Shown here: piece by piece, positions 6,376-57,145 of the stretch | Layout of the letters: each line of letters begins with the position of its first letter | Position numbering within the stretch: position 1 is the stretch's first letter | IMG/VR virus record: IMGVR_UViG_3300023257_000007 | Span: 284,223 to 348,222 of that record | Direction: 5' to 3' (one strand) | Length of the DNA: 64,000 bases | Notes under the pieces: generated by a model | The model's database searches: none | Told to the model about the DNA's origin: nothing | What the model saw: the letters and a program-made list of their open reading frames with translations, nothing else | Position numbers and translations under genes: made by a program

Positions 6376-6379
6376 AATT

Positions 6380-8884: not shown

Positions 8885-9046
8885 TTAATATGATTTTAAG
8901 GGGGGTGAGTAATTATTATTTATCTGTTAGAATTGGTGTTTTCTTTTTATTTTTTTGCCTTTTAACGAATTCTTCATGTTTTTTGTCAAAAATATAACCA
9001 TTTTTTTCGATCTTTTTAATGATATGTTTTTCTGCATCATCTAACA

Positions 9047-9194
9047 TCTTTTGTTTTCTTTCTTCTATCATAGTTTTTATTTTCTTTTTATTATGATTTC
9101 ATCATAAATTTATCCAACAATCTTTTGTTTTCTTTCTTCTATCATAGTTTTTATTTTCTTTTTATTATGATTTCATCATAAATTTATCCAACAA
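9047..9194. repeat. perfect tandem duplication, 2 x 74 bp
   Basis: 9047-9120 equals 9121-9194; includes the start of a small ORF (MIEERKQKMLDD...) paralogous to one near 10000-10168. Confidence 0.9.
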
Positions 9195-9211
9195 TCTCGA
9201 TCAACTCATTA

Positions 9212-23142: not shown

Positions 23143-23144
23143 AA

Positions 23145-23676: not shown

Positions 23677-23678
23677 AT

Positions 23679-24179
23679 CTAATTTATTTTTATAATATTT
23701 TTTTTATCTGTAATTTTTACAGTATCTTTCTCTTCTTTTATATTGTTAATTGAACGCAATAAATCTTTTTCTTCTTTTATATTTGAATAATTTTTATATT
23801 CGTAATCACTTTTCTGTTGAAATGTAACTTTTATATCCTTTTTATGTCCAAATAAATTTTTATCAAAAACAATATACCATTGTATATCATTTGTTAATTT
23901 ATCATATTTAATATTAACACCATCTTCATAATCTTTACCATCATATTGATAAATGGCAGTTACTTGATAATTCGTTTTATTGTGTCTTATTTTAGGATAT
24001 ATCTGGTGTGTTTCATTGCTATAACTTATAGAAGCGTAAAACCAAAATATAATTGAACAAATTAAAGTACAAATCAATGCACCATACCAATGTTCAGTTG
24101 CTTTACCAATCCATCCAAATATTAAACCTAATATACAAGCCGAACATATACATATCATAACTATTACACTTACACTCAT
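23679..24179 (-). CDS. two-TM membrane protein, paralog array member
   Basis: IYP motif, ends NIIKIN. Confidence 0.8.
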   Translation of the reverse strand: MSVSVIVMICICSACILGLIFGWIGKATEHWYGALICTLICSIIFWFYASISYSNETHQIYPKIRHNKTNYQVTAIYQYDGKDYEDGVNIKYDKLTNDIQWYIVFDKNLFGHKKDIKVTFQQKSDYEYKNYSNIKEEKDLLRSINNIKEEKDTVKITDKKNIIKIN

Positions 24180-24180
24180 A

Positions 24181-24666
24181 TTACAATTCTATTAAATTAC
24201 TTTTTATTTTTTCTTTTATTTCAGGGTCTTTTTTCTTTTCTTCTGTTTTTTCTTCTGTTTTCTTAGAATAATCAACGCTTTTAACTATATTTTTAGGTTT
24301 TTTAAATACTATTGTAGATTTATTAAGTTTATAACCATAAAAATTCATATTATATTCAACATACCACTCTAAACCAGGTTTAAGATCATTGAAATTAACA
24401 TTAATCTTTTCTGTTTTTTCTTCACCTTTATATTCATAAATAGCATAAACAATTTGATTATTTTCATCATAATCTATTCTAGGATAGATTCTTTCAGATA
24501 CTTTATCAAACACATTACCCATAAATATAAATATGATAACAAATGAAATAACACCAATAATAAGACTCGGTACTCCAAGACCGACCAAATCTTTTTTTAT
24601 CGAATAAATAAATCCCAATAAACATAATGGGAATATAAATAAATTTATTAAAGCAATTATACTCAT
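24181..24666 (-). CDS. two-TM membrane protein, paralog array member
   Basis: IYP motif, ends NLIEL. Confidence 0.8.
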   Translation of the reverse strand: MSIIALINLFIFPLCLLGFIYSIKKDLVGLGVPSLIIGVISFVIIFIFMGNVFDKVSERIYPRIDYDENNQIVYAIYEYKGEEKTEKINVNFNDLKPGLEWYVEYNMNFYGYKLNKSTIVFKKPKNIVKSVDYSKKTEEKTEEKKKDPEIKEKIKSNLIEL

Positions 24667-27456: not shown

Positions 27457-27858
27457 ATGAAACATTTAAAAACATATGAAAATATAAAAGATTTTGACAA
27501 AAATAAAGAAGATCTAATAAAAATGACAGTTAAATATCGAAATGAAATTGCTGATAAAATTTATAGTCTTGAAAAATATACCAAATCTAGAATAATAGAA
27601 ATACCATTTAATTCTCATCCTAAATATGATTTAATAAGAATTGAATGGTGTGATGTTGAAAAGATGACAAGTTTTGATATTGATATTGATATTTGTGCTG
27701 TTGGTGAAGGTTTAAACCACCTTGTTTTTTGGTTAAACCAAGGAAAAATTACTAAATCTCGTAATTTTAATAAGAAAGTTTACGATGAAATTATAAAAAC
27801 TATAATGGACGATAATTTAGAACAATATTTAATATCAAATAGAATGGGATTATTATGA
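27457..27858 (+). CDS. hypothetical protein with leader and tail
   Basis: MKHLKTYEN... ends SNRMGLL. Confidence 0.8.
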   Translation: MKHLKTYENIKDFDKNKEDLIKMTVKYRNEIADKIYSLEKYTKSRIIEIPFNSHPKYDLIRIEWCDVEKMTSFDIDIDICAVGEGLNHLVFWLNQGKITKSRNFNKKVYDEIIKTIMDDNLEQYLISNRMGLL

Positions 27859-27859
27859 T

Positions 27860-28342
27860 TTATAATAAACCCATTTTTCTAGCTTCAAGTTTTTCTTCAA
27901 TATCAAAATCAGGATCGAATAAAATATCATATATTTTCAATATTAGATACTTCTGAATTTTATGTCCAAAATCATCTATATTATACTCATCATCACCTAT
28001 TTCATTCACAATTGATATGTGCCATAATTCTTTGATTTCAAAATCATCTTGTTTTTGTCCCATATAATGTTCATTTTTCCAAAATAAAATATATTTTATA
28101 TCCTTATTAAATCCTTCTTCTTCTAATTTAAATGGTTTTATTGGAATAAATACTTCGTAATCATTACCTTTTTTAATATGATATTTTGTGAATATTTTAG
28201 TAGCTTTATTGTAAAGTTTTTCTAATCAATCTTCAACAAGATCAATCATCTCTTTTTCACTTTTTTTCAATTTCTCCTTAGCATCTGCAACAATACTAAT
28301 ATATTCATCATATTTCTTTAATTTATTTCTTAATTCACTCAT
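27860..28342 (-). pseudogene. leader- and tail-bearing gene with one in-frame TGA
   Basis: MSELRNKLKKYDEYI...VED*LEKL...ARKMGLL; TGA at 28226-28228, 161 codons in one frame. Confidence 0.7.
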
Positions 28343-33317: not shown

Positions 33318-34587
33318 GTGAAATATCTAAAAAAATATGAACTACTCTCTAAAGATGAAAAAATCAAAGAGTGGGAAAAAATGCAGAATAATGTAGATTT
33401 AGTAAAAAAATTATTAAATCATGAAAAATTTCATTATCACATAAAAGATTTAATATTAAAAGATTTAAATACACAAATAAAAGACAGATTAGTTATAGTT
33501 GTGGCTGGTATATCACCAGGTATAGATGGTTGTGATATTCAAGTATCATTCCAGACAAATCCTTCAATAGGCGCATTTTATGGTAGACCTATTAACATGA
33601 ATGATGTTAAAAGTATATTAAAAAATATTGATAATGTTTCAGATGATGTGTTTCATTCACAACCATCATTTTTTATGAGTGAAGAAGATCTTATTTTTGT
33701 ATATAAATTTAGATTTGATGAATTTATTAAAAATAATAAGTGGATAACAGAAGGAGAGAATCTAGGATTAATGTAATGAAATATCTAAAGAAATATGAAT
33801 CATGGTATGATGAAAAACCTATACCAGAAATATACGACAAATGTATGTTACTTAAAAAATATGCAAAAGTTGACCACGAAGGTTTACATATTATAAAAAT
33901 ACCAATACCTATTCATATAGAAGATCAATCTTTTAATAATGTTTATTTAATTTATGATAATAGAAAAATTCATATATTTGCATCAGATGATTGGTGGAGA
34001 GATAAAGATAGTAAAGAATTAATCTGCTTAGGTTTAACTGTTGATGATAAATATCAAAAACCAAGAATACACCATTGGTCAACAATAGATTTGAAAAAAG
34101 TATTACCAGCCTTAGAAGAATATATGAAAAATAATGATATAATAAAATATGCAGAAGCAAACAATTTAGGACTATTATGAAAAATTACATAACATTTTTA
34201 AATGAGGGTTATTCTAATATTGAACAGAAAGTTTTAAATATATTGCAAAAATTAGAAAAGTATGCAATAGTTTTAAGCGAAGAAAAATATGAATTATCAG
34301 AAATATTAATAAAAAAACCATATACAGTAGATAATAGTAAACAACATGAATTTAAATATTTATCAATACAATATAAATACAATAAATTTAATGGTACAAA
34401 TTATATAATTGTATATGGTATACAAAAATGTGATGTTAATGATATAATATTAGCATTTAAATTGGGTACTCATGATATTAGAACAGAAGTTTTAGAACAA
34501 GAAAAAGAATTATACCCTTTATACGATTACCTTTCATCAGACGATATTGTTCCACTAATACAATCAAGTAGACTTGGATTAATGTAA
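33318..34587 (+). other. operon of three leader- and tail-bearing genes (33318-33776, 33776-34180, 34177-34587)
   Basis: Starts MKYLKKYE/MKYLKKYE/MKNYITFLNE; ends GENLGLM/ANNLGLL/SSRLGLM; overlapping stop-start junctions. Confidence 0.8.
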
Positions 34588-36187: not shown

Positions 36188-39100
36188 CTAATTTTTAATT
36201 ATTTTTTTTGTAAATATGTTATCTCCTGAAGTTAATACAATCATATACATTGCAGGAGGCAATTTTGATAAATCTATTGATGATATTTCTGCATTTTGAT
36301 ACTCATATTCCATTATTATTTGTCCATAATGATTGAATAGTTCTACATTTATTTTGTCTGTTTTATCAAAGTTTTCAAGATATATATAAATAATATCTCT
36401 AAATGGGTTAGGATAAATCACAACAGATTGATTTGCCGTTGTTTGATTACAAGAAGCCTGAATAAAATTGTAAGTTTTCGAAGTTCCGTCATAATCAACT
36501 TGAGTGAGTCTGTAATAGTTAATCCCGTCTGAGAAATTTGGATCTTTGAAGATGTAGTTTAATAAATTATTAGAATTTCCATTACCATCAATTTTTCCAA
36601 TCTGATCAAAATCCTTTGCGTTTGACGATCTTTCGATAGTGAAATAATCGTTATTTATTTCGCTAGCAGTTGTCCACTGAATATCTATGTTTCCATTATT
36701 GCAATCGGCTTCAAATTTCACAAGATTAACAGGCAAAGGATTTTCGTTACTCTTTGATCCGAAAGTAATTATTTTATTTGACTTTGCTCCAAAAGTAACA
36801 GGAAAACGAGATCTTATAAAGCCTGCATCGTGTGTAAAGCTTGTCAATAGAGGATCACTGTTGAAATCAATATTTGCCCACATAGAACCATTCCAATAGG
36901 CTACAAGTAAATCACTGGCAACAAAATCACCTGAAATCCCATCGTCAAAACCATGAACACAGATGGCGTCGTCAACATGAGTATTGTCGAACCAATATAG
37001 AGTTACAGGCATATCTTGGTCAGAATTAACTACCCAATTTTCTCTATTGCTGACATGATGCAAATTAAGGTCCATATTTCCGCCATGTTCCCACCAATCT
37101 GGCATGTAGGTATTTGAGAAATTATACTGAGCAGTAACAGTAACAGTTGATGCTCCTGTTGGATGTATTCCTAATGCTCCTGCAATGGCATATTCTACAG
37201 ATCCGTTGCCATCAAAATCTTGGATGCTAACATCACCTGTTGGGAAAATAAATTCATTTATCCCAGTTTTAGTAATCATTCCATCAACAAAACTATTGTT
37301 TGAAGAAACATTTGCTGTTGCTGAATTTATAAATGTAAGTGAACCTCCACCAGAATAATAAACAATACCATGGGTAAATGTTGCAGTTCCTTCTATTGTC
37401 ATAGGTGAAGTTATTTCAATATCAGCATGATTACCAAACGAGTTATCAAATAATATATTATTAAAATTACCTACACCTGCATTAATAGTCTGTAATCCAC
37501 TACCGTTAAATGCAACTGTTCCATTTCCGGCATTAAATGTTCCAGAGTTATTCCAATCACCTGTTACTTCTAATGATGACAATCCGCCCAAAGTCAATCC
37601 TGTGCCGATATTCATATCTTCGCAATAAACTGTGGAACTTGCTGTAGTTACAGCATTTGTAGTTGCACAAGTTCCAGCGTCGTAAGATTGAATAAATACA
37701 TTGCTGGTTGCAGAAGGTAATAGAGTTGCAACAGAGTATAGTGTGCCGTTATAATATAACCAGTTTGTAACATCGTCCCAACTATTACCGTTTGCTCCAG
37801 TCCAAAAGTAGTCGCCAGTGCCAATACCACCAGGTGTAGGTGCTGTTGTAACTGTTACTACCCAGCTTCCACCTGCCACTTCGAAACCTGTGTTACAAGT
37901 TCCATCATGTGCCCAACGTCTATAAGTTGTAGTTACTGTTAATCCTCCAGGAGGGTTGTAACTTGCAGAAGTCGCACCAGAAATATCTACTCCGTTAGCT
38001 TGCCATTTATATGTGATAGTATTATCACCACCGCTTGCTACAGCAGTAGAGCTAATATTTGCAGGATCTGTTCCCTGACAGATTGTTTCGCCTGTAGATA
38101 GAATTGTTCCAGCTGTGAAATCTGGTCGAACTGTAACAGTCCATGTTCCTGTTGCAGTTTCACCAGAACAGTTGTTGTTACTGTTAACCGTCATGGTGAG
38201 GGTAACTGTGTTTCCGGCATCACCTGCTGCTGGAGTGTAAGTTGGTGTTAATGTTGTTGCTCCGGATGTGATTGAACCTGCACCGTCTTCTGTCCAAGCA
38301 ATCGTACCGTTAGAAGCACTTGCTCCACTGACTGTCGCAGTTTCATTAACACAAATGTCCTGCGATCCGCCAGCCGAAGCTGTTGGTAATGGATCAACAT
38401 TCACGGTGTATGTTGCTGTTGCTATTTGAGGTGTACAAGCATTATCACTTGTTACAGTCATTGTAAGAGTAATTGTTCCACTGGCATCACCAGCAGCTGG
38501 AGTGTAAGTTGGTGTTAATGTTGTTGCTCCCGATGTGATAGAACCTGCACCGTTTTCTGTCCAAGCAATCGTACCGTTAGAAGCACTTGCTCCACTGACT
38601 GTCGCAGTTTCATTAACACAAATGTCCTGCGATCCGCCAGCCGAAGCTGTTGGTAATGGATCGACATTCACGGCTACATTATCACTTACTCCGCAACCAC
38701 TGGCTGTGGCTGTCATGGTGTAAGTTGTTGTTGATGATGGAGTTGCTACTGGATTTAAAATATTTGGATTACTTAAACCAGTAGTAGGAGACCAAGAGCA
38801 GGTTGGTTGTGCTTGTACGTTATAATGAACGATTCCATTAAACGCTCTAGGTGAACATACACTTGAAAATTGACCACATAATCCAATACCAGCTGTTAAT
38901 GTTAAATAAGAATCTGAATATGTTGTGTTTGCTGTAAGGGTAGTATATTTAGCATTGAAGTTAACATATATACCATAAGTCTGATTTGCCGGTATTATAA
39001 GATTGGCAATATCAAGATAATATTGAGTGCTTGTAACACCATTAATAGAATATGTCCCTAAAAGAATCCAAGAACCACTTGTTGTTTCACTACCTACATA

Positions 39101-41023
39101 GCTTCCCGATTTATAATATACATTAACGGTTTGGGTAGCAGTACTACCAGGTAAAATTGTAAATGCATCAATTTCAATAGGATTTGCACCAGTTGTTAAA
39201 TCAAACATATTTCCTCCACCACATCCATTACCTGCTGCAAAAGTAGTTGTTAAACTACAACTAACAGTACTAAGATTAGCACTTCCACTCAATTGCGAAC
39301 TCGACCCATTACAAATTGTCACATCACTTCCGGCCGAAACTCCTGTTGGTAAAGGATTTACTGTAACTGCCACACTTGCAGCAGCACTCCATGCTCCATC
39401 GCCGGTTCGGTACGATCTAATGTAATACGTTCCTGATGTTGTTACATTATATGTTGAGCCACTGCTTGTCGTAGATGTTCCACTGGCAGAGGTTTGCCAA
39501 TACCATGTTTCTCCAGAAGGAGGTGTGCCGTTTGCGGTGATTGTTACACTGCCGCAACCTGGAGAGTTTGAAGTTGGTGTGTTTGGGGTAATAGGTAGAA
39601 TAACGGCAACGGCAACAATACAAGTATAATCTTCCGTTTCACCATAAGTAAGTGCAGCACATGGATCGGTAGGCGTAGTAGTTCCATAATAATCTGAACG
39701 TATACGCATTTTGTGTGAACCCAGTGTAGCACCAACCGGAATTGTAAAACTTGTGTTTACGGCCGTAGTATTAGAAGGATTAACATAAGTAAGAACCTTC
39801 TCACCTGCGGAAAATGTCAGATCATCATTAAAATCAATCCACACAACATGATCCATACCATAACTCTGAGTGGTGAGACTCAAATTAACAACACCTCCTT
39901 GTACCTGCGATACAGAATAGGTGCCACTATAATCGGTATAAGAGGTTGATGAACAACCTGAGGTACTATTAAAGTTGGTCAGCCCACCTGATGTGGTAAC
40001 ATTTGTTATCCACATATAATTGCAAGGATAAGAAGAAACAATCGGGCTGCAGGGTGGAGCTACAGCTTCTATAATCTCTATATCATCAATAGACATATCG
40101 CTTGTGTATGATGTAGATGTAAGCCCTCTAAAACGCAATTGAACACTACTGTTACCAGCATATGTGCTAAGATCTACATTCGCAGTATGCCATGAGTTAC
40201 CTTGGTCGCCACTTAGGCTCCATACGGTATTCCATGTACCACAATTGTCACCGGATGCTTCAAGATACAATGTTCCCATAACTGCACCGTACATATGGTA
40301 TTGAAAGCTCATATCTATTCCCCCCATAGACGAGAAATCGAGACATGGTCCATACATTGTTGCTGTTTTATTGGAATAATTTGGTGTAGATGATTCCGTG
40401 TACATGTAGTAGCTACCTTCTGCTGCTGCGCTTGGTCCGGTACCGCCTGAGCTAGTGCCTCCGGTTTGTCTTGTCCAATCGAAATCATCCCCGGGTCTAT
40501 TCTCCCAATATCCCATTCCTGTTTCAAATCCTTCTGAGTAAGGAAATGTGCTTACTATTGCAGGGCATGAGCAGGGTGGTGCTCCACCACTAGAAACAAA
40601 TGTAATCGTAGTGGTAACGCAACCAGTATTCGTTCCACAAGATGAATTTGTATTCCAATGTGCATAATATGTTCCTGAACTTGTCGCAGTCCATTGTAAA
40701 GGACTGGTTCCGTGAGCAACCACAGCTCCATTATATGAGCCAGATCTGATTGTAACATATCCTCCCGTACTAATTGCACAACTGTATGTAGTTCCTGAAA
40801 CTACACTATTTATTGTACTATACTCTGTTTGAAAACTACATGTGCTAAAAGTTTCACTTCCAGATGTAGGTGCAGTTGCACTTCCATAAGAAGAAGAATT
40901 TGTACATTGAGCTTGCACCTTGTTAATTGTAAATAACATGCTTATTGCCAATAAAAGCACATAAATCCCTTTGATATTCGATAACTTATTCAGCAATACT
41001 GAAAATGTATAATTTTCTTTCAT
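36188..41023 (-). CDS. T9SS cargo adhesin-like protein (MAM, GEVED, Ig-like repeats, type A CTD)
   Basis: Signal peptide; MAM (DFDW...GP..A.EG.YYMY.E...YHMYG); GETEDY; LPV.L..F.A..W.TASE.NND.F.IERS; IYPNPF...L....Y.I...TKKIIK; visibly higher GC than flanks. Confidence 0.9.
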   Translation of the reverse strand: MKENYTFSVLLNKLSNIKGIYVLLLAISMLFTINKVQAQCTNSSSYGSATAPTSGSETFSTCSFQTEYSTINSVVSGTTYSCAISTGGYVTIRSGSYNGAVVAHGTSPLQWTATSSGTYYAHWNTNSSCGTNTGCVTTTITFVSSGGAPPCSCPAIVSTFPYSEGFETGMGYWENRPGDDFDWTRQTGGTSSGGTGPSAAAEGSYYMYTESSTPNYSNKTATMYGPCLDFSSMGGIDMSFQYHMYGAVMGTLYLEASGDNCGTWNTVWSLSGDQGNSWHTANVDLSTYAGNSSVQLRFRGLTSTSYTSDMSIDDIEIIEAVAPPCSPIVSSYPCNYMWITNVTTSGGLTNFNSTSGCSSTSYTDYSGTYSVSQVQGGVVNLSLTTQSYGMDHVVWIDFNDDLTFSAGEKVLTYVNPSNTTAVNTSFTIPVGATLGSHKMRIRSDYYGTTTPTDPCAALTYGETEDYTCIVAVAVILPITPNTPTSNSPGCGSVTITANGTPPSGETWYWQTSASGTSTTSSGSTYNVTTSGTYYIRSYRTGDGAWSAAASVAVTVNPLPTGVSAGSDVTICNGSSSQLSGSANLSTVSCSLTTTFAAGNGCGGGNMFDLTTGANPIEIDAFTILPGSTATQTVNVYYKSGSYVGSETTSGSWILLGTYSINGVTSTQYYLDIANLIIPANQTYGIYVNFNAKYTTLTANTTYSDSYLTLTAGIGLCGQFSSVCSPRAFNGIVHYNVQAQPTCSWSPTTGLSNPNILNPVATPSSTTTYTMTATASGCGVSDNVAVNVDPLPTASAGGSQDICVNETATVSGASASNGTIAWTENGAGSITSGATTLTPTYTPAAGDASGTITLTMTVTSDNACTPQIATATYTVNVDPLPTASAGGSQDICVNETATVSGASASNGTIAWTEDGAGSITSGATTLTPTYTPAAGDAGNTVTLTMTVNSNNNCSGETATGTWTVTVRPDFTAGTILSTGETICQGTDPANISSTAVASGGDNTITYKWQANGVDISGATSASYNPPGGLTVTTTYRRWAHDGTCNTGFEVAGGSWVVTVTTAPTPGGIGTGDYFWTGANGNSWDDVTNWLYYNGTLYSVATLLPSATSNVFIQSYDAGTCATTNAVTTASSTVYCEDMNIGTGLTLGGLSSLEVTGDWNNSGTFNAGNGTVAFNGSGLQTINAGVGNFNNILFDNSFGNHADIEITSPMTIEGTATFTHGIVYYSGGGSLTFINSATANVSSNNSFVDGMITKTGINEFIFPTGDVSIQDFDGNGSVEYAIAGALGIHPTGASTVTVTAQYNFSNTYMPDWWEHGGNMDLNLHHVSNRENWVVNSDQDMPVTLYWFDNTHVDDAICVHGFDDGISGDFVASDLLVAYWNGSMWANIDFNSDPLLTSFTHDAGFIRSRFPVTFGAKSNKIITFGSKSNENPLPVNLVKFEADCNNGNIDIQWTTASEINNDYFTIERSSNAKDFDQIGKIDGNGNSNNLLNYIFKDPNFSDGINYYRLTQVDYDGTSKTYNFIQASCNQTTANQSVVIYPNPFRDIIYIYLENFDKTDKINVELFNHYGQIIMEYEYQNAEISSIDLSKLPPAMYMIVLTSGDNIFTKKIIKN
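38228..38674. repeat. near-identical internal direct repeat, 267-bp period
   Basis: DPLPTASAGGSQDICVNETATVSG...TPAAGDA occurs twice. Confidence 0.85.
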
Positions 41024-46794: not shown

Positions 46795-47218
46795 TTACAA
46801 GAGTCCCATTTTATCGCCTTATGTGTCTATATTCTTTTAAGATATCTTCATTAATAAAATCAATATTTTTTTTATATATATTTATTAAATCTTTTATATA
46901 TCCTCGTTCTACATAATTTTTTTGAAATTTATAAGATTTTAAACTATTTACAATATTATTATAAACTTCGTCACTTATTTTCATATAATTTTCATAATCA
47001 GTTTCAAAATTGGTTACTCTAATTGTATTTGAAGCGATTATTATAGAATTATCGTCATTTTTTAATGTTATTAAACGGTCAATATTTAAGTGGTTTATAT
47101 TAACATCTAATTCTGAAATTTTGATATAATTATTAAGTATATCATTGATTTGTTGTTTAATTTTCTTTTTAAAAAAATTATCAATAATCAAATTTTCATA
47201 TGTTTTTAAATACTTCAT
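46795..47218 (-). CDS. leader-bearing protein; GDKMGLL tail present but out of frame
   Basis: ORF 46811-47218 ends HIRR*; ggc gat aaa atg gga ctc ttg taa at 46818-46795 lies in another frame. Confidence 0.65.
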
Positions 47219-47877
47219 TACATCAATCCCATTTTATTTGCATTATAAAGGTCAGGATTTTCTTTCCAAAACCATTCCCAATAACCATCTAAATTATAAT
47301 AAGGTAATTGGTTATCATGACAATATAATTCTCTTAATCCTTTAGGTATTTCAGGTAATTTAGTTAATTGGTTATTATCACAATATAATTCTTTTAATTC
47401 TTCAGGCAATTCAGGTAATTCAGTTAATTGGTTATCACCGCAATATAATTGTATTAATTCTTTAGGTAATTCAGGTAATTCAGTTAGTTGGTTATTAGAA
47501 CAATATAATGTTTTTAATTCTTTAGATAATTCAGGTAATTCAGTTAATTGGTTATTAGCACAATATAGTCCTTTTAATCCTTTAGGTAATTCAGGTAATT
47601 CTGTTAATTTGTTATTAGCACAATCAAATTCTTCTAATTCTTTAGGTAATTCGGTTAATTCAGTTAGTTGGTTATAATGACAATATAATATTTTTAATCC
47701 TTTAGGTAATTCAGGTAATTTAGTTAATTTGTTATCATCACAATATAAATAAATTAACCCTTTTGGCAATTCAGGTAATTTAGTTAAACCTAAACCATTT
47801 AAATTTAATGTTTTACCATCAACACTTAAATGGTCTTTAATTAATTTATTTTCTGAATATGTTTTCAAATACTTCAT
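47218..47877 (-). CDS. LRR protein (about eight 20-aa LPELP repeats) with leader and tail
   Basis: 60-nt tandem units; starts MKYLKTYSE; ends ANKMGLM. Confidence 0.9.
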   Translation of the reverse strand: MKYLKTYSENKLIKDHLSVDGKTLNLNGLGLTKLPELPKGLIYLYCDDNKLTKLPELPKGLKILYCHYNQLTELTELPKELEEFDCANNKLTELPELPKGLKGLYCANNQLTELPELSKELKTLYCSNNQLTELPELPKELIQLYCGDNQLTELPELPEELKELYCDNNQLTKLPEIPKGLRELYCHDNQLPYYNLDGYWEWFWKENPDLYNANKMGLM

Positions 47878-48391: not shown

Positions 48392-49111
48392 GTGGAAAGG
48401 TTAAAATCATATAAATTATTTACTGAATCAACAACTGTAATTGGAAATTATATAAGACCAGATAAATTATCAGAAGAAGGTGAAAAATTAAATCACTATT
48501 TGCAAAATAAAGTTAAAGAAATTAAGGGCATATATCCTATTAAAAACTTTAGAGAAACTTGGTCAAATGGAGTTATAGACAAGTATATTTTCACAATACA
48601 TACATTTGACAAATTTAAAATCAAAGATATTACTGATAAATTCAAATATCTTAATATTGAACCAGAAATAGACCAAAATACTTATGATAAGTATGTAACA
48701 TACACTTTTAATAAAGGTGAATTGGATTGGATTTTTGATGCTAATAAAATGGGATTACTTGAAAATAATAGTGAAAATAATAGTGAAAATATTGAAGATA
48801 TATTAGAAAATTGGTTATTAAGTATGTTTCCATTTATGGATGAACGTGATGTTTACATAAATGAATTATATTATGGTGGATATTCAGTAGAAATATGGAT
48901 GGCAGGTTTTGATCCTGATGAAGATATCAAATTGTTAGAAGATTGGTTTGAAGAAACATTAGACGAATTAGAAAAATTAAAAATTGGTGATAGTTTGCGA
49001 TCTGTTATTGATATTGAAGATGGTCAATTTACAATCAATTTTGAATTTGATGAAGATAACAAAGATATATGGAATTGGGCCGTTGAAGGCGATAAAATGA
49101 ATTTATTTTAA
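48392..49111 (+). CDS. two-module fusion protein with internal and terminal tails
   Basis: Internal DANKMGLL then ENNSENNSEN; ends GDKMNLF. Confidence 0.75.
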   Translation: MERLKSYKLFTESTTVIGNYIRPDKLSEEGEKLNHYLQNKVKEIKGIYPIKNFRETWSNGVIDKYIFTIHTFDKFKIKDITDKFKYLNIEPEIDQNTYDKYVTYTFNKGELDWIFDANKMGLLENNSENNSENIEDILENWLLSMFPFMDERDVYINELYYGGYSVEIWMAGFDPDEDIKLLEDWFEETLDELEKLKIGDSLRSVIDIEDGQFTINFEFDEDNKDIWNWAVEGDKMNLF

Positions 49112-49933: not shown

Positions 49934-50832
49934 ATGAAAATATTACAACGTAAATTTGTAACGAGATTAATAGGAGTTCCTAATTGGAAATATTATGGTT
50001 ATGAATATTGGGATGTTGTTCCTGATATTCATAAACAAACTTTAGAAATTGAACATAATACAAGAAGTGGTAAATTCAGAATTTATATTGACAGAGATGA
50101 AATTGAAGTAATAAAATACGAAGAAGAATTAGAAGCTATCATAAAAGCTTATAGAAAATATTTAAATGATGATAAAATTAGATAAAGATTATGTGATAAT
50201 TTGGGGTGCAAGAACTCATAATGGTTATGTGTATCGTAAAGAAGAATTTCCAGTTGATATTGAGAAAGAATTTTATGTCATGTCTGAATATTCTAATGAT
50301 TTTAAATTAAAAAATATATGTGCAATGACAAATGTATGTATTGATAATATTGGTTTTTATGTAGAAAATTTCAGATTTATAGATACACAAATAGGCAAAA
50401 TATGTAAAAAACTTGGTGGTTTAGGTATAAAACAATATATTCATACACAATCTATGGGTTCACATTATAGTGATACAACAACGGTTCACAAATTAATTGG
50501 TTTTTATATATCACCGGTTTCAATGTATGATAATTTACCAGCTAAAATAATAAAGAAACAAAGAAAATTAAAATTAAATAGAATTAAAAATGCATAAAAT
50601 TGGAAATTTTTTTAGAATTATATTAAATATTAAAGTAGAATATCACTTTGAGTTTTTTATTTATTTAGATGAACAAACAGGAGAAATCGTAGAAGATGAA
50701 ATAACTGGACATATTAAATGGATGGATAAATTCTCAATAAGATCAACTACTAGAAACAAAGCTCAAAAATTAGCTTGGTGTAAAGTAAATGCAAAGTTTC
50801 CTGATTTAGTAAATAAATTGTGGATGTTTTAA
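49934..50832 (+). other. three hypothetical genes (49934-50185, 50166-50597 with RK tail, 50590-50832)
   Basis: Overlapping ORFs; 50166 ends KKQRKLKLNRIKNA. Confidence 0.7.
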
Positions 50833-51388
50833 ATCAATCCCATGTTACTTCCTTGAAAAAACCAATGTGGATCTGACATTATTTTATCTAAATCTAATTG
50901 TATCATATAATGATGCAAATCTTCTTCTTCATATAATTTAATACAAGTAAATTCATCAAGAATTTCTAATAGTTTATTAAGATCAACATCACAATCTACA
51001 CGTACTATACCACTTACAGTAGAATATATATTGGGTATTTCATCTTTATCATATATTTCAACACCAATTTTTGTAAATTCTTGTCTTAGATATAAGACAA
51101 ATTGAGATATTCTTTCAACATATTCTTCGTTTCCTGTATCATTTGCTACAGCAGTCCATTTTTGTAGATTTTCATATATTTTCAAATATTTCATTTTGAA
51201 CCTTCTAATTCTTTAAGACTTATTAAAAAAATATCATCTTTTAATAAATAATCAATATCTTCTACACTATAATATTCATCTTCAATATAAATAGTCATCC
51301 CCTGAGCAGGTACAAAATTTAAACTTACAGATATATCATTTATATCATCATCTATATAAGTTTTTAAATCAAAAATAATTGCAAACAT
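50829..51388 (-). other. two hypothetical genes (50829-51194 with leader and tail; 51191-51388)
   Basis: MKYLKIYEN...GSNMGLI. Confidence 0.7.
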
Positions 51389-51444
51389 AATTTTAAGTTT
51401 ATTTATATTATATATTTATTTTAATATATAGCTTTATAATATAT

Positions 51445-53317
51445 TTGAAATCATATAAAACCTTTGAATGGAGAGAATCTGAAGTGGTTTGTTTACCAAT
51501 TGAAGTATTTAGTGAATATTCAAATTCTATGGGCCAATCACAAAAAATAAATATTGATGTTCAAGAATATTTAAAATCAAAAGGATTAAAAACACTTTCA
51601 GGTAATGACATGGTAGTCAGTTCTTTTACAAATTTTATTGTTATTATATTTGAATCTAAAAGAACATATTATACTTTTTATGATACTATTGAAGGTATTA
51701 AAGGAGTTTACAACAATCCAGAAATATTAGATACAGTAACATCTAATGAATTATTAAATGGCGATTTAGATTATATGTTTGATGCAAATAAATTAGGATT
51801 ATTATGAAATATTTAAAAACATATGAAAATCTTATAGAACCAGATTATGATAATATTGATTTTATAAAAGTAATGGACCAAAATAATAATCAAATTAATG
51901 GTTTAACATATAAATTTAAAGCTACACGTTCACGTTTAAAAAAAATATCCAGCTTTTACGACCATGATGAATCACTAAAATTAAAAATATTACTAAAAGA
52001 AATGAAAATGAAAATACATAAATTATTTTTAACTAACATAAAACTAAAAGAAGAATATTATAAAAGAAACCCAGATATTAAAGCTGGTGAAGATTTAGGA
52101 TTATTATGAAACATTTAAAAACATATGAAGGGTTTAGTAAACCTAAAATGGTAGAAAAACCAGAACAAATTTATTTCACAAACATCAAAGCCAATGATAT
52201 TTTTGAAGCATGGAAAATTCTTGAAAAACATTTCAATATACCAAAAGTTGATAGTTCTCTTAATATTGATTCAAATCTTTTTCTAAAATCAATTAAAAAT
52301 AAACAATATAAAGAAATGTATATTCGACACATGGAAGAACATGGTAAACATTTTACAACTAAAGCTATTGTATATGATAAACATAACAATACACCCTTTA
52401 CAGTTGTTAATATAAATGACGTTAATTTTGGATATGAAAATTTTAATTTTTATGATTGGGCTGAAGAGAACGGTTATAGTTATATTCTTCAAGGAAATGA
52501 TCTAGGATTATTATGAAAAACAATTCAATATGAAATACTTAAAAACAAAAAAAATATTCGAAAACCAATCCAAAGAAATATCTGCACTTTTAAATGATAT
52601 CAATGTTAATAATATTAAAGGTATTCAAGAATATATTGATAAAGGTTATGATTTAGATTATAAAGATGAAGATGGTGATTTTGCTTTAATATATGCTACT
52701 TTAAATTATATAATAAATATTAGTGATGGTCCAAATAATTCTAAAGGTGAATTTTCAACAATAGAATTTTTAATTGACGCTGGTGCTAATTGGAATATTA
52801 AAGATAACGATAATAAAACATTTTGTGATTATTTAGAAGATAAAGATAAAGAAAAACTAAAAGATAAATATCCTGATAAATATGGACAATATATATCAAG
52901 TAAATTAGGACTATTATAATGATATATTTAAAAACATATAAAGAATCCAAAGAGGATTTTGATACTTTTAAACGAATTGAAGTTTGGAGTAAACTTAGAC
53001 CTTATTACAATAAATATGGTTCATTTGAATTAAATGTTAATATTACATTTAAGTTTGGTTTTGAAGAAGATGAAGTAAAAGATTACATATTTACTAGAAA
53101 CATAAAGAAAATAAAATATACATCACTAGATTATATTGAATTACATTCAACATTGACAGTTATAGATAAAGATGGTGGTACAAGAAGTGAAGAACAAGTA
53201 AGAAATTTTAGAAGTTGTGATAATAAATCTTTAAACGAAGTATTTAAATATATTAAAAATATATCAAATGAAGACATCATTTCATATATAGAATCAAATA
53301 GAATGGGCTTATTATAA
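51445..53317 (+). other. array of five leader- and tail-bearing genes (51445, 51804, 52106, 52530, 52919)
   Basis: All end [K/D/R][L/M]GLL; junctions of the form ggattattatgaaa.atttaaaaacatatgaa. Confidence 0.85.
52530..52919 (+). CDS. ankyrin repeat protein with leader and tail
   Basis: G.DLDYKDEDGDFALIYA...FLIDAGANWNIKDND. Confidence 0.75.
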   Translation: MKYLKTKKIFENQSKEISALLNDINVNNIKGIQEYIDKGYDLDYKDEDGDFALIYATLNYIINISDGPNNSKGEFSTIEFLIDAGANWNIKDNDNKTFCDYLEDKDKEKLKDKYPDKYGQYISSKLGLL

Positions 53318-53320
53318 ATA

Positions 53321-53348
53321 AAAAAGCCACTTTTTGAGTGGCTTTTTT
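53321..53348. terminator. bidirectional terminator
   Basis: aaaaagccact-tttt-gagtggcttttt between convergent genes. Confidence 0.75.
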
Positions 53349-53368
53349 AATATCTTTACAGTTAAAGA

Positions 53369-53647
53369 TTACACATTAACTGCTTCAGCTAGCCCTTTAC
53401 CAGCTTTAAATCTAACGACATTCTTTGCAGGAATATCAATTGATTCGCCAGTTCTCGGGTTTCTACCTTTACGTGCTTTTCGAGCAACTACTTTAAAGGA
53501 ACCAAAGTTCACAAGTTTCACATCTTCGCCTTTTGCAAGGGATTCTTTAATCACTTCCATGATTACGTTAATTACTTCTTTGCTAGCTTTTTTTGTATTG
53601 CCTGTAGCTTCGGCAACTGCATTTGTTAGGTCTTTTTTATTCGCCAT
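53369..53647 (-). CDS. hup: HU family DNA-binding protein
   Basis: NKKDL...FGSF...RKARKGRNPRTGE.I.IPA..V.RFKAGK; TATCTTTG (-7-like) at 53693-53700. Confidence 0.95.
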   Translation of the reverse strand: MANKKDLTNAVAEATGNTKKASKEVINVIMEVIKESLAKGEDVKLVNFGSFKVVARKARKGRNPRTGESIDIPAKNVVRFKAGKGLAEAVNV

Positions 53648-53861
53648 AATTCAAATTTTAAGGGTTAAACATTAATTTATAATTTCTTACTTCAAAGATA
53701 AGGAACTTTCTACCTGAAAAAAAATATTTCGTAAATTATTTTCACATTTTATTTTCACATTCATCTCGTAAGTATAAAAATAATATCAAGAAAATCCGAA
53801 TTTGTTTAATAAAAATTCAATAAAAATCAAAGAAATTTTAAATTGTTTATTGGAGATACTT

Positions 53862-54765
53862 TTATATGAGACCTAGTTTGTTTCCTTCTAAATAATATTT
53901 TATTTCTTCAACATTATCAAATTCCATACAATTTCTTTGACTACCATCTTCATTTTTTTTATTAACGCGAAAAAAAAATACTTTTTCTCATTGTTTCAAA
54001 ATATAATACAGCATATAAAGTTGAATGTATATTATAACCTTCATAAGAAGGTATATTATGAACCCAATTAAATCCTAATTTATTAAGTTTCTTATATAAA
54101 TCAATACCTTCATCAACAGTATCATAATTAAACTTAAAAGCAATGGAATTAGAAATATTAGATTCATTTAAAACTGGTTCTATTTCTTCTATTATATCTT
54201 GTATAAAATGTTGAGCTTCAAATACAGTTAAATCACCCATATCATTGCCTTTAGGAACGGTAAAAGCATAATCACCATATTTAATAAGCTTTTTTCCACC
54301 TGGATCATTATCTAACTTATCATTATCATATATAACCACCTTAATCTGTGGCAAAATATCAAACCATTGTTTTAAGTTTGAAGGATCATTACAAAAAACA
54401 GCAATAGCAGGATAACCAGATTGATGTATTCTAGCAGCATCAAAAATACCTTCAACTATAAACAAATATTTATCACCAGGTTTTATTGATTCTATACCCC
54501 ACGCACCAATTTTCTTACCTTTATATTCTTCACCAAAGTAAGTATAATACTTAGTATCAGGTTTATTCATTCCTTGTGATATATTCTTAGGGAAATTTGG
54601 ATTGTATTTTTGATAACCAACCATTTGACCAGACATATTATAAATATTAAAATATACATCACCTTTATCATTAATGAAAACATCATTGTGTTCAGGATCT
54701 ATACCTCTTTCTCTTAAATGAGATTTAGTATCAACTAATTCATTATATGTCTTTAAATATTTCAT
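53862..54765 (-). CDS. Toprim/primase-like protein with leader; tail reached only by a frameshift in a T9 run
   Basis: FIVEGIFDA...YDND...DMGD; ORF stops at 53962, but with T8 it continues to EGNKLGLI*. Confidence 0.7.
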
Positions 54766-55762
54766 TATAATAAATCCATCTTTTTACTTTCAATCCATTG
54801 TTTCATTTCTTTACTGAAAAAATATTTATATAAAGGAATCAATTGTTTCGTTCTTTTTAATTTATCTAAATTTTCTTTTTTTAAAATATTATCTCTTTCA
54901 AATATACCAGACTTTCTTACAGTAAAAATATTGTCATTATTATTATACATTGATACCTCACAAATATGTATCCAAGGCCAATTATTTACAATCTGAACTT
55001 GACGAATACCATCACCCCAATCTACATATTGATCAAATATAATATTACTACCAATATATTTTCTCATAGAAATAATTAATTCAGACATTTCATCAAACAT
55101 CTTTTGTTCAATATCATCTAATTTCTCTTTTTGTTTAATATAATCTTCGTAAGTTTTCATTAAATCAATCCCATTTTATTACCATCAAATATATAAGAAT
55201 ATTTCTTTTTTATATCAGATCGAACTTTCAATTCTCTAAATCTTTCAGGATTTTTTATAAGAAATTCATCTTGAAATAAATAAGTGTTAATGATGTGTCT
55301 ATATATATTATCATTTGAAAAATCTATATCATCAATATTTTTATTAAAATATAAAAACAATTTAATATAAAGATTAGCATATACTCTAGACGTATAAGCA
55401 ATAGATAATATTTCTTGTAAAATATTAGTTTTGCTAAAATCAAAACCTAATTCAATTAAATATTCAAACATATCAATAAAACCTTTTTGATCTTTTATGA
55501 TGTCATCATTTGTTCTGTATATTGTATGTTTTATTATTGGTAATTTGTCAATTTGTGCATCTTTTCCAAACTCATCATATATTCTCTTAGCTAATTTTTT
55601 AGATTCTTCCCAGTTTTCATTTTTATATTCACCTTTATTAGTATAATTATAATATCTAGGATTTAATAAACTTGAGAATTTTCCTTTCAAAAATTGAGGA
55701 TGGTCTTCATATTCTGAAAGTTTAGTAAATTCTAATTCTTCATATGTTTTTAGGTATTTCAT
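54765..55762 (-). other. two leader- and tail-bearing genes (54765-55160, 55160-55762)
   Basis: MKTYEDYI...SKKMDLL; MKYLKTYEE...GNKMGLI. Confidence 0.8.
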
Positions 55763-55795
55763 ATTATTCCATATATATAAAAAATCTAAACTAAT

Positions 55796-56422
55796 TTGAA
55801 AAAATCAAATAAAAATACTATGAAATTATATAAACCAAAAGAAGGTGAAACAGTTTATTACAATGATAGAAAGGCTATCTGTTGTTATGTATATGATGGT
55901 GATTATATTAGAATTCAATATGATAATTCTTTAGATGATGAAAAAGATACTGATTATGTACTTTTCTGGTTATTAGAAACCATGAAACAAAACAGAAAAA
56001 AGAAACTAGACAGAGTTAAAATGAAAAATGATAATATTGGTGAAATCAACTTTTTTAAACATTATGATTTAATAAGAGATAATAAAACGGTGAACAACAC
56101 TTTAAATAAACATGTATCTGAAGCTTCAGATCAATTTAATGAAGAATTTAAAGATCTTAGTTCACAATTAAAATATAATCTTGTTGGTGAAGAATTAGAA
56201 ATAAGATTTGTAATAGGAAAGTCAATTGAACATTATAATGATTTTACATATGAATTATTTTCATGTTTACAACACATAGAAGGTGGAGAATCAGCAACAT
56301 TCAAAATTAAAGATGAAATATTTAAAACTGATGATATTGAACAATACTTAATAGATATGTTTGGTAGCGATAAATTTAGTACAATTGTTCATCATTTACA
56401 ATTAATAAATACAATAAAATAA
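55796..56422 (+). CDS. hypothetical protein, likely a fusion with an internal RK tail
   Basis: Internal RKKKLDRVK. Confidence 0.65.
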   Translation: MKKSNKNTMKLYKPKEGETVYYNDRKAICCYVYDGDYIRIQYDNSLDDEKDTDYVLFWLLETMKQNRKKKLDRVKMKNDNIGEINFFKHYDLIRDNKTVNNTLNKHVSEASDQFNEEFKDLSSQLKYNLVGEELEIRFVIGKSIEHYNDFTYELFSCLQHIEGGESATFKIKDEIFKTDDIEQYLIDMFGSDKFSTIVHHLQLINTIK

Positions 56423-56425: not shown

Positions 56426-57145
56426 ATGAAAATTAGAAACGGATTTGTAAGTAACAGTTCTTCTAGTAGTTTTATTATACATGGTGTAAAAATTACAAAC
56501 AAAGAAGACATTGAAAAATTAACTAAATTATCTTGGCCTGAACAAAGTGAACTTGGTCTTGAATTAGAAGAAGATAGATATTTCTTTGGTGGTAATGATA
56601 AAGATAACGATTATATAGTTGGTTTAAATGGTGGTAATCTTGAAGATGGTGTCATCGCTGAAATTAAACCATTAACTGAATCAAATAAAGAAAAATTGGT
56701 TAAAATATTAAAAACATTAGATATTAAGATAAATATTGATAATATTAAAACATATGCTCAATATATAAGCAATGATAATTATTAAACAATAAATTATAAA
56801 AATATGAAAATAAGAAACGGATTTGTAAGCAACTCAAGTAGCAGTAGCTTCATGATTGAAAATAAAACAGATAAAGATTTAACATTAGTGGATTTTATAA
56901 CTGAACAACCTAATTTAATACAAGAATATGTAGATGAATATGATAGAGATGATCCTGAATACACTCAAGAAAATCTTTTAATCTCAGCAAAATTAAATAA
57001 TGTTACATTTAAAGCAAAGACAGAAGAAGCTTATACTTTTGGTGATGATGATGGAACATTAATTGGTAAGATACTTGATTATATGTTAAGAGATAATTGG
57101 GAAACAGAAAGTTTCAAGTGGAAATTTCATAGTTCAAATAGATAA
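56426..57145 (+). other. tandem pair of MKIRNGFVSNSSSSSF-family proteins (56426-56785, 56804-57145)
   Basis: Identical first 16 aa with synonymous differences; divergent bodies. Confidence 0.85.

What the first reader, a model, noticed from the sequence alone, without database searches (positions are those of the whole stretch)
51780..52945. Tail-stop-start-leader junctions form a recurring DNA element of about 35 nt that could drive gene shuffling
Seen: consecutive genes are joined by near-identical junctions, e.g. ttaggattattatgaaatatttaaaaacatatgaa (about 51793) and ttaggattattatgaaacatttaaaaacatatgaa (about 52095), with similar ones near 33765, 34165, 47218, 52905, 54765 and 55160. Inference: each gene is bracketed by homologous ends, so short-homology recombination could insert, delete or swap whole tagged genes. 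That would make an integrase-free cassette array with built-in translational coupling.
Basis: inference. Interest (0 to 1): 0.62.

Follow-up and report, generated by a model that had tools for sequence, protein, structure and literature searches.

The report
Two-ended peptide tags in a megaphage
The repeated 35-base gene junction is real, but it is two short protein tags (one ending a gene, one starting the next) written back to back; they mark over a hundred small accessory proteins of a giant bacteriophage, most likely as address labels, and any role in gene shuffling is unproven.

Summary

It is not a dedicated DNA element. It is a C-terminal peptide tag, an overlapping stop/start (ATGA or TAATG), and an N-terminal tag.
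- C-tag: [ED][AGS]x[KR][ML]G[LI][LIYM]-stop.
- N-tag: MK[YH][LI]K[TK][YF][EN].

Each tag also occurs alone, including at operon ends. In about 600 kb attributed to this phage, 135 of 922 ORFs carry the C-tag, 77 the N-tag and 51 both (odds ratio 18). Carriers are small, acidic, mostly orphan proteins, plus leucine-rich-repeat and ankyrin proteins.

Replacements in the C-tag are conservative. Related phages use a different C-tag dialect (K[YF]N[IL]) on homologous proteins. Both points indicate selection on the protein.

The host genome is a salt-lake Mahaphage-clade megaphage of at least 434 kb, with a T4-like head module.

My best reading is that the tags are address labels, possibly for prohead loading like the T4 capsid-targeting sequence.

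Recombination at junctions is plausible: a RecA-like gene is present and some junction pairs share 20-40 nt exactly. It was not shown. Gene order was fixed in eight assemblies and across one diverged relative, and the one deletion variant breaks elsewhere.

The parts
51793..51827 (+). Junction 1. C-tag codons (LGLL) of gene 51445-51807, ATGA stop/start overlap, N-tag codons (MKYLKTYE) of gene 51804-52109.
52095..52129 (+). Junction 2. It is 34/35 identical to junction 1: LGLL, ATGA, then MKHLKTYE of gene 52106-52516.
52495..52550 (+). Junction 3. It carries a 6-codon mini-ORF (MKNNSI, 52513-52533) overlapped by ATGA on both sides, between the C-tag of 52106-52516 and the start of 52530-52919 (MKYLKTKK, ankyrin-like).
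52899..52945 (+). Junction 4. KLGLL, TAATG overlap, then MIYLKTYK of gene 52919-53317.
51445..53317 (+). Operon-like run of five C-tagged small genes (120, 101, 136, 129 and 132 aa). Their bodies are mutually unrelated and two tested members have no relatives in large protein databases.
53319..53349 (.). Bidirectional intrinsic terminator closing the array. The last gene keeps its C-tag (NRMGLL) although no gene follows it.
54739..54790 (-). Junction on the minus strand. KKMDLL of 54765-55160, TAATG, then MKYLKTYN of the primase-like gene 53962-54765, which has the N-tag only.
55135..55185 (-). Junction on the minus strand. NKMGLI of 55160-55762, TAATG, then MKTYEDYIKQ of 54765-55160. The same gene pair and junction type are kept in a relative with 40% identity (L201).
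47192..47240 (-). Junction on the minus strand. NKMGLM of the LRR gene 47218-47877, TAATG, then MKYLKTYE of 46811-47218.
33755..34200 (+). Two further junctions (33776 TAATG, 34177 ATGA) linking three C-tagged genes: 33381-33776, 33776-34180 and 34177-34587.
27457..28063 (.). Two convergent genes (27457-27858 on the plus strand, 27860-28063 on the minus strand). Both end in RMGLL/KMGLL with no downstream gene. They serve as a control showing the C-tag is not merely a start region for the next gene.
50829..51194 (-). Gene carrying both tags whose C-tag (SNMGLI) faces a convergent gene. This is a second such control.
48392..49111 (+). ORF with an internal relic C-tag (DANKMGLL, about 48737-48760). 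It is read through into a second half that ends in its own tag (DKMNLF), so it appears to be two fused cassettes.

Best explanation
The recurring junction is the back-to-back coding of two terminal peptide tags, joined by an overlapping stop/start codon (ATGA or TAATG) that couples translation of neighbouring genes.

Shown:
- The C-tag is the end of a C-terminal alpha-helix, closed by a Gly (Asn in sister lineages) and followed by one or two hydrophobic residues at the very C-terminus.
- The N-tag is the first 8 residues of an N-terminal helix.
- The two tags co-occur strongly on a large class of small, acidic, soluble, mostly orphan proteins that includes LRR and ankyrin proteins.
- These genes cluster in arrays in a roughly 130 kb arm of a Mahaphage-clade megaphage with a T4-like head module.
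- The tags are more conserved than the protein bodies, and the C-tag differs by lineage while the body family is shared.

Inferred: the tags are address labels read by a common, co-evolving phage or host partner.

My pick, at about 0.3: they load these proteins into the T4-like prohead for co-injection. The N-tag would act like the T4 capsid-targeting sequence MKTYQEFIAE, and the C-tag like an encapsulin cargo peptide.

The DNA similarity of junctions is a consequence of the tags plus extreme AT codon bias, with extra A-ending codon preference at gene ends. Recombination between junctions is a possible side effect and is not demonstrated.

My confidence that the junction is coded tags plus coupling, under protein-level selection, is about 0.85. 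The figure of 0.55 given as confidence is for the whole statement, including 'address label'.
For: Enrichment at the termini:
- The strict C-tag is found on 60/506, 48/169 and 27/247 ORFs of three contigs, against an internal 5-mer rate of 2.5e-4.
- The N-tag core sits at residues 2-8 in 41/922 proteins, against 5 internal hits in 168,775 positions.
- Co-occurrence has odds ratio 18 (p = 4e-28) here and odds ratio 49 in sister contigs.

Portability:
- 42 C-tagged proteins have no paralogue in the 88 kb piece.
- An HMM iteration with the tags trimmed found no superfamily.

Protein-level selection:
- Replacements are conservative: M/L/F, G/N, L/I/V, K/R and A/S/G.
- Dialects are exclusive to each genome. 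LRR and ankyrin homologues carry ...KMGLM here and ...KFNL in G003.
- An orthologue with 40% identity keeps both tags.
- The C-tag is present at operon ends and at convergent gene ends.

Structure:
- AlphaFold LRR model, pLDDT 93: the N-tag starts helix 2-16, and the C-tag is helix 208-215 followed by G-L-M.
- Model of a 106-aa family, pLDDT 77: helix 91-102 followed by G-L-I.

Not an RNA or DNA element:
- No Rfam hit.
- Junction folds have z-scores around 0.
- Uncoupled genes have no Shine-Dalgarno signal.

T4-like head module: gp23-like capsid protein (85.5 bits), gp20-like portal (227 bits) and a weak gp21-like domain. Two genes carrying both tags lie directly downstream in the same run.

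The T4 capsid-targeting sequence and the diversity of T4 internal proteins are taken from PMC8442874, PMC3012670 and PMC12373910.
Against: - 135 tagged genes is many more than the handful of T4 internal proteins.
- Tagged proteins are acidic (median pI 5.3), whereas T4 internal proteins are basic.
- No [LIV]xE cleavage motif is enriched after the N-tag.
- The N-tag also sits on a primase-like protein, and N-tag-like starts occur on an AAA ATPase and on many proteins of the 735 kb relative that lacks the C-tag. The N-tag may therefore be a more general feature.
- Gly is GGA in 40/48 tags against 30% genome-wide, and Thr is ACA in 17/17. Some nucleotide-level constraint or shared descent therefore exists.
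- No partner protein was identified.
Confidence: 0.55

Rival explanations
1. The junction is primarily a DNA recombination substrate: tagged genes are integrase-free cassettes that are inserted, deleted or swapped by short-homology recombination, and the peptide tags persist because they make every recombinant in-frame and translationally coupled.
For: - There are 25 junctions, and pairs share up to 40 nt exactly.
- A RecA/UvsX-like gene is present.
- GGA, ACA and GCA codons are over-used in the tags.
- In the sister lineage a conserved 193-aa anchor gene is flanked by non-homologous tagged neighbours, with the DNA homology ending about 38 nt past its stop. There are also single-gene inversions, and 19 of 21 tagged orthologue pairs have no conserved neighbour.
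- There is a fused two-cassette ORF and a 6-codon relic mini-ORF.
- Precedent exists in PeSL-mediated shuffling and mini-circles in T4-like phages (PMC2839356, PMC4122927).
Against: - Replacement patterns and lineage dialects show protein-level selection.
- The tags occur alone and at operon ends.
- Homology also ends at gene boundaries for untagged genes.
- Gene order is identical in 8 assemblies, and the 259 kb assembly overlap is 100% identical between two samples.
- Order across the 55160 junction is kept in a relative with 40% identity.
- Contig 'joints' at junctions all have flanks of 46 nt or less, which is repeat cross-mapping. The one clean deletion breaks inside gene bodies at an ATGG-CCAA microhomology.
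Confidence: 0.15
2. The tags are terminal degrons. They would deliver a large set of accessory proteins to a Clp-type protease for timed turnover during infection.
For: - Extreme-terminal position and a non-polar C-terminus, as in ssrA-like signals (my own knowledge of ClpX recognition classes).
- A bona fide ClpP gene (215 bits) lies in contig G004, which uses the same dialect.
Against: - No ClpX or ClpA was looked for or found.
- ClpP is absent from the 330 kb sister contig that has 104 tagged genes. That contig is incomplete.
- The C-tag helix is confidently packed in two models rather than being a free tail.
Confidence: 0.12
3. The junction is mainly a translation signal. The C-tag codons would give an A-rich, Kozak-like upstream region, and the N-tag codons an unstructured AU-rich start, for re-initiation in a host that lacks Shine-Dalgarno pairing.
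For: - Uncoupled genes lack Shine-Dalgarno signals: only 10% have one.
- Overlap coupling is 3-5 times enriched after C-tags.
- GGA is used in 26/28 coupled tags against 14/20 uncoupled tags (p = 0.053).
- A-ending codons are preferred at gene ends generally.
Against: - The C-tag is equally conserved where no gene follows.
- The sister dialect has quite different DNA (AAATTTAATTTA against AAAATGGGATTATTA) but the same residue classes.
- The N-tag occurs on first genes of operons.
- There is no consistent RNA structure.
Confidence: 0.1
4. The tags have no shared partner. They would be generic structural caps (an N-terminal helix start and a C-terminal helix with a Gly/Asn cap), inherited because new genes in these arrays arise by duplication and overprinting between fixed ends.
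For: - Both models place the tags in helices that belong to the fold.
- G/N alternation fits a helix C-cap (my own structural knowledge).
- The families are otherwise unrelated.
Against: - It is hard to explain dialects that are exclusive to a genome across dozens of unrelated folds.
- It is hard to explain odds ratios of 18-49 for N/C co-occurrence.
- It is hard to explain tags that are more conserved than the bodies without a common reader.
Confidence: 0.13

Closest known systems
T4 internal proteins with the N-terminal capsid-targeting sequence (MKTYQEFIAE) in hypervariable Ip loci (PMC8442874, PMC3012670, PMC12373910; Repoila et al. 1994, known to me only as cited there and from memory)
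   Same: Unrelated small accessory proteins share only a short N-terminal leader of about 8-10 aa. The K-T-Y-E/Q core is similar; variants here read MKTYEDYIKQ and MKTYENFIEK, and MKTYQQFNE occurs in a sister contig. The phage has a T4-type portal and capsid protein. Repoila et al. already proposed that shared ends favour shuffling.
   Different: There is a second tag at the C-terminus, which has no T4 counterpart. There are over 100 carriers instead of a handful. The carriers are acidic rather than basic. No L/I-x-E cleavage motif follows the N-tag. The N-tag also occurs on a primase-like protein. Packaging is untested.
PeSL (promoter-early stem-loop) cassettes that mediate modular shuffling and mini-circles in T4-like phages (PMC2839356, PMC4122927)
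   Same: A short repeated motif flanks orphan genes in plastic genome regions of a phage that has its own recombinase. The proposed outcome is the same: integrase-free gain, loss or swapping of single genes.
   Different: PeSLs are intergenic regulatory DNA (a promoter plus a terminator hairpin). The junction here is coding sequence with no hairpin and no promoter excess. No indel or circle with breakpoints in the motif was found.
Mahaphage clade of huge phages (634-735 kb genomes, Lak phages; predicted Bacteroidetes hosts; PMC7162821)
   Same: The major capsid protein is 64% identical to that of the 735,411 bp genome LR756501, about 50% identical to the 634-642 kb genomes and 29% to Lak phages. 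Overlapping assemblies give at least 434 kb. Signs of a Bacteroidota host include a protein with a T9SS sorting domain and starts without Shine-Dalgarno signals.
   Different: The 735 kb genome has N-terminal KTYE-like starts, but its LRR-like proteins lack the C-tag. The two-ended tag system is a sub-clade trait that my searches of the literature did not find described.
Encapsulin C-terminal cargo-loading peptides (from my own knowledge; not checked in a paper here)
   Same: A short motif at the extreme C-terminus, with Gly flanked by hydrophobic residues, on unrelated cargo proteins. It is read by an HK97-fold shell, and the T4-type capsid protein has that fold.
   Different: Binding is untested. 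The motif here is preceded by an amphipathic helix and is paired with an N-terminal tag.

Membership tests
T4 internal-protein / capsid-targeting-sequence system | A short N-terminal leader shared by otherwise unrelated small proteins | tested here: met
   77/922 ORFs carry MK[YH][LI]K[TK][YF][EN]. The core is enriched about 1500-fold at residues 2-8, and the protein bodies are unrelated.
T4 internal-protein / capsid-targeting-sequence system | The leader ends at a prohead-protease site (L/I-x-E) | tested here: not met
   [LIV]xE occurs in residues 4-22 of 26% of tagged and 35% of untagged proteins. Only a Glu at position 8 or 9 is conserved.
T4 internal-protein / capsid-targeting-sequence system | T4-type head module (portal gp20, capsid gp23, protease gp21) | tested here: inconclusive
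   gp20 scores 227 bits and gp23 85.5 bits, both over their cut-offs. The gp21-like domain scores only 21.9-23.5 bits against a cut-off of 27.
T4 internal-protein / capsid-targeting-sequence system | Proteins are basic, packaged in the head and injected | tested here: not met
   For basicity: median pI is 5.26 against 6.09 for untagged proteins. Packaging and injection cannot be tested with these tools.
PeSL-type modular shuffling cassettes | A repeated short motif flanking orphan genes in plastic regions | tested here: met
PeSL-type modular shuffling cassettes | The motif is an intergenic promoter plus a stem-loop terminator | tested here: not met
   The junction is coding sequence. Promoter-like sites are not above the shuffle expectation (95 against 103). 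Fold z-scores range from -2.4 to +0.7 with no common hairpin.
PeSL-type modular shuffling cassettes | Indels or replacements between close relatives, or mini-circles, with breakpoints in the motif | tested here: inconclusive
   No diverged close relative exists in the collections; the other contigs are 100% identical overlaps. Gene order is the same in 8 assemblies. Contig joints are only cross-mapping. Distant relatives are mosaic, but not in a tag-specific way.
Integron gene cassettes | attC-type structured recombination sites and an integrase | tested here: not met
   There is no conserved structure at the junctions. An integrase was not searched for.
Clp-type terminal degrons | A non-polar extreme C-terminus plus a cognate Clp protease | tested here: inconclusive
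   The tag ends in two hydrophobic residues. ClpP is present in G004 (215 bits) but not in G003. Degradation is not testable here.
Mahaphage clade (genome-level placement) | Capsid protein clusters with the 634-735 kb genomes, and the genome is very large | tested here: met
   64% identity to LR756501 over 100% of the protein. The genome is at least 434 kb from overlapping contigs. No tree was built.

The most novel reading that the evidence does not exclude
A sub-clade of Mahaphage megaphages runs a proteome-wide, two-ended address system. An N-terminal and a C-terminal tag, with lineage-specific C-tag dialects that co-evolve with an unknown reader, would direct more than 100 unrelated effector-like proteins (LRR, ankyrin, orphans, HU-like) to one destination. 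That destination could be the prohead for co-injection, or a phage-made compartment. The same tags would make every gene a seamlessly exchangeable, translationally coupled cassette.
Probability: 0.3. Interest if true: 0.85.

Novelty: new variant of a known kind. Interest (0 to 1): 0.62.

Why it matters
Huge phages carry hundreds of genes of unknown function. Here about 15% of ORFs, and nearly 30% in one genome arm, are marked by the same two terminal tags. That turns an unstructured list of orphan genes into one testable class: find the reader of the tag and you learn where over 100 proteins go.

If the destination is the capsid, this would extend the T4 internal-protein principle to a scale not seen before, and it would name the likely injected arsenal of Bacteroidota megaphages. 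The tags would also be ready-made handles for loading foreign proteins.

For genome evolution, the arrays offer a clean system to ask whether protein-level tags double as recombination linkers. The evidence here neither establishes nor excludes that.

Tried and rejected
- Structured RNA or a known RNA family: no Rfam hit in the window, and no common fold at six junctions.
- Shine-Dalgarno reading of the GGA in the tag: uncoupled genes lack Shine-Dalgarno signals.
- N-tag and C-tag clasping each other: unlikely, because in the LRR model they lie at opposite ends of a 9-repeat solenoid (distance inferred from LRR geometry, not measured).
- One superfamily behind the C-tag: an HMM iteration with the tags trimmed did not grow beyond 4 members.
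- Fold searches of the 106-aa family model (PDB, BFVD): no significant match.
- The ESM Atlas model of the 52106-52516 protein is poor (pLDDT 0.44), so its nearest folds are uninformative.
- PADLOC and PHROGs scans of 24 tagged proteins gave only the primase hit and unnamed families.
- A phage-encoded tail-specific (S41) protease as the C-tag reader: none found.
- Literature search for the tag strings: nothing relevant.
- Close-relative synteny: the 'relatives' in IMG/VR proved to be 100% identical overlapping assemblies of the same phage.
- Scan of cellular genomes for the N-tag DNA: 7 MAG contigs from unrelated taxa, AT-rich and probably mis-binned phage, with no host signal.
Full report
**What is in the sequence**

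The window has 22-31% GC, apart from one gene in the 36-40 kb stretch (38% there), and is densely coded. At 51445-53317 five small genes follow each other on the plus strand.

None was found in 100 shuffles.

Read in frame, the element is three things in a row:
- the last codons of one gene (…L-G-L-L);
- a stop that overlaps the next start (ATGA, or TAATG elsewhere);
- the first eight codons of the next gene (M-K-Y/H-L-K-T-Y-E).

**The junction is two independent peptide tags**

In the 88.5 kb piece that holds the window, 59 of 169 crude ORFs end in a motif of the form [YFL]x[ED][AGS]x[KR][ML]G[LI][LIYM].

With a stricter pattern the counts are 60/506, 48/169 and 27/247 ORFs in three contigs. 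The same 5-mer occurs internally at only 2.5e-4 per position.

The N-terminal core sits at residues 2-8 in 41 of 922 proteins, against 5 internal occurrences in 168,775 positions.

The two tags co-occur: 51 ORFs have both, 26 the N-tag only, 84 the C-tag only and 761 neither (odds ratio 18, p = 4e-28).

Each tag also occurs without the other and without a neighbouring gene:
- The C-tag is intact before the terminator at 53319-53349.
- It is intact at the convergent gene ends 27858/27860 and at 50829.
- The N-tag heads first genes of operons and a primase-like protein at 53962-54765 (phrog_849, 7e-26).

Of the C-tagged proteins, 42 have no paralogue in the 88 kb piece. An HMM iteration with the tags trimmed found no hidden superfamily. 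Two array members (52106-52516 and 52919-53317) have no relatives in a search of 5.8 billion proteins. The recognisable domains among carriers are LRR and ankyrin repeats.

**Protein-level or DNA-level conservation?**

Replacements inside the C-tag keep residue class while changing codons freely: ATG/TTA/CTT/TTT at position -4, K/R at -5, A/S/G at -7 and L/I/Y/M/F at -1.

Sister phages use another dialect, …K[YF]N[IL]-stop, and dialects never mix within a contig. G003 has 104 such ORFs of 595, and G012 has 37 of 138.

Homologous bodies carry the local dialect. The LRR protein ends …NPDLYNANKMGLM here and …NPERKQAKKFNL in G003, at 45-49% identity. An ankyrin pair behaves the same way.

A 198-aa relative with 40% identity (P0003) keeps MKHLKTYEELEFTK… and …DADNMGLL, so the tags are more conserved than the body.

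Gly and Asn are the classic helix C-cap residues (my own knowledge). AlphaFold agrees:
- In the LRR model (pLDDT 93) the N-tag opens helix 2-16. The C-tag is helix 208-215 followed by G-L-M.
- In a 106-aa family (pLDDT 77) it is helix 91-102 followed by G-L-I.

Some nucleotide-level signal remains. Gly is GGA in 40/48 tags against 30% genome-wide, and Thr6 is ACA in 17/17. Untagged genes also favour A-ending codons at their ends. GGA is only weakly linked to coupling (p = 0.053).

There is no Rfam match and no shared RNA fold. Uncoupled genes lack Shine-Dalgarno motifs.

**Translational coupling**

Overlapped stop/start follows C-tagged genes in 40-75% of same-strand pairs, against 14-16% after untagged genes. 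This holds in five contigs.

**What genome this is**

- The 88.5 kb piece is the end of a 348 kb IMG/VR contig.
- That contig's first 259 kb is 100% identical to part of a 344 kb contig from another sample. The genome is therefore at least 434 kb. CheckV's estimate of about 48% completeness suggests roughly 700 kb.
- It has a T4-type portal (227 bits), a gp23-type capsid protein (85.5 bits) and a weak gp21-like domain.
- It encodes a RecA/UvsX-like protein.
- The capsid protein is 64% identical to that of the 735,411 bp genome LR756501, and about 50% to the 634-642 kb genomes. These are the sizes Al-Shayeb et al. give for their four largest Mahaphage-clade genomes, with predicted Bacteroidetes hosts (PMC7162821).
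- A 1611-aa protein with a T9SS sorting domain at 38% GC, and the lack of Shine-Dalgarno signals, fit a Bacteroidota host.
- The source runs are salt-lake metagenomes.
- Tagged genes concentrate in a roughly 130 kb arm. Two of them sit directly downstream of the head genes.
- The 735 kb relative shows KTYE-like N-termini, but its LRR-like proteins have no C-tag.

**Does the junction drive shuffling?**

In favour:
- Some junction pairs share 20-40 nt exactly, and a recombinase is present.
- In the sister lineage a 193-aa anchor gene (77% nucleotide identity) has non-homologous tagged neighbours, with DNA homology ending about 38 nt past its stop.
- One tagged gene is inverted between genomes.
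- 19 of 21 tagged orthologue pairs have no conserved neighbour.
- An ORF at 48392-49111 reads through an internal C-tag, and a 6-codon mini-ORF bridges 52516/52530.

Against:
- Homology ends at gene boundaries for untagged genes as well.
- All 8 assemblies carrying the 52106-52516 protein have identical neighbours.
- The relative with 40% identity keeps the gene pair and the TAATG junction at 55160, and also the divergent neighbours.
- When contigs of four other runs were laid on 50800-55800, every 'joint' touching a junction had only 20-46 nt on its shorter side. This is the signature of a repeat shared with other loci, and contigs simply break at 51801-51828.
- The one clean variant joins 51533 to 52731. 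It skips 1197 nt at an ATGG-CCAA microhomology, and both breakpoints lie inside gene bodies.

The model is therefore plausible and has a precedent in PeSL shuffling (PMC2839356, PMC4122927) and in the T4 Ip loci (PMC12373910). It is unproven, and the tags clearly do not exist only for it.

**What the tags most likely do**

A short terminal motif shared by unrelated proteins, more conserved than their bodies and with genome-specific dialects, is what a signal read by a common co-evolving partner looks like.

The closest documented case is the T4 capsid-targeting sequence MKTYQEFIAE on otherwise unrelated internal proteins (PMC8442874, PMC3012670). Variants here read MKTYEDYIKQ and MKTYENFIEK, and the head module is T4-like. 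I therefore favour prohead loading, at about 0.3.

The objections are real:
- There are over 100 carriers.
- The carriers are acidic (median pI 5.26).
- No L/I-x-E site follows the N-tag.
- The N-tag also occurs on a primase-like protein.

Alternatives I cannot exclude are Clp degrons (ClpP in G004), a translation-start role, or structural caps without a reader.

**Verdict**

- The more interesting finding is a two-ended tag system marking about 15% of a megaphage's ORFs. My searches did not find it described.
- I rate it a new variant of a known kind, with interest 0.62.

Noticed in passing
window 36188-41023 (-): A 1611-aa protein with MAM, GEVED and a C-terminal T9SS sorting domain lies in the 36-40 kb stretch, where GC is 38% against about 24% around it. 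It looks like a recent acquisition from a Bacteroidota host.
   Followed up: partly
window 20990-22186 (-); G004 5783-6982, 126087-127301, 165429-166595: Four TnpB/OrfB_IS605-type genes are scattered through the phage contigs. One lies at the contig end where the assemblies branch.
   Followed up: no
window 48392-49111 (+): This ORF contains an internal C-tag (DANKMGLL) followed without a stop by ENNSENNSEN… and a second tagged end. It appears to be two cassettes fused by loss of the stop/start.
   Followed up: partly
window 52513-52533 (+): A six-codon mini-ORF (MKNNSI) is overlapped by ATGA with both neighbours. It may be the relic of a collapsed cassette.
   Followed up: no
window 53369-53647 (-); G001 309330-309644, 317200-317634, 323277-323585: The window's HU-like protein ends normally. 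Three paralogues elsewhere in the genome carry an extra 10-aa tail, YTAEEREELG[IL], that resembles a C-tag.
   Followed up: partly
window 51534-52730: One metagenome contig (run X7, depth about 4) joins 51533 to 52731 with no mismatches. This is a 1197-nt deletion variant, or a chimera, at an ATGG-CCAA microhomology inside two gene bodies.
   Followed up: partly
G004 128107-128766 and 131793-132437: A full ClpP gene (215 bits) and a rhomboid-domain protein lie in the contig of the same dialect.
   Followed up: partly
window 56426-57145 (+): Tandem paralogues starting MKIRNGFVSNSSSS are conserved next to the AAA/VWA block or the tagged genes in distant relatives (L094, L099, L102, L201). Their function is unknown.
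   Followed up: no
window 22558-24666 (-): Four tandem paralogues (152-194 aa) have hydrophobic N-termini and a shared …NIIKLN end. This is a different, local terminal motif.
   Followed up: no
G006 1-259159 = G001 85476-344634; G004 165298-166268 = G006 259030-260000: Three IMG/VR 'genomes' are overlapping or branching assemblies of one megaphage, or of very close strains. Catalogues therefore over-count them and under-size the genome.
   Followed up: partly
LR756501 (L195) 4341-9755: In the 735 kb relative, five tandem paralogues of 332-361 aa lie near the head genes. They have N-tag-like starts and Gly-rich basic ends.
   Followed up: no
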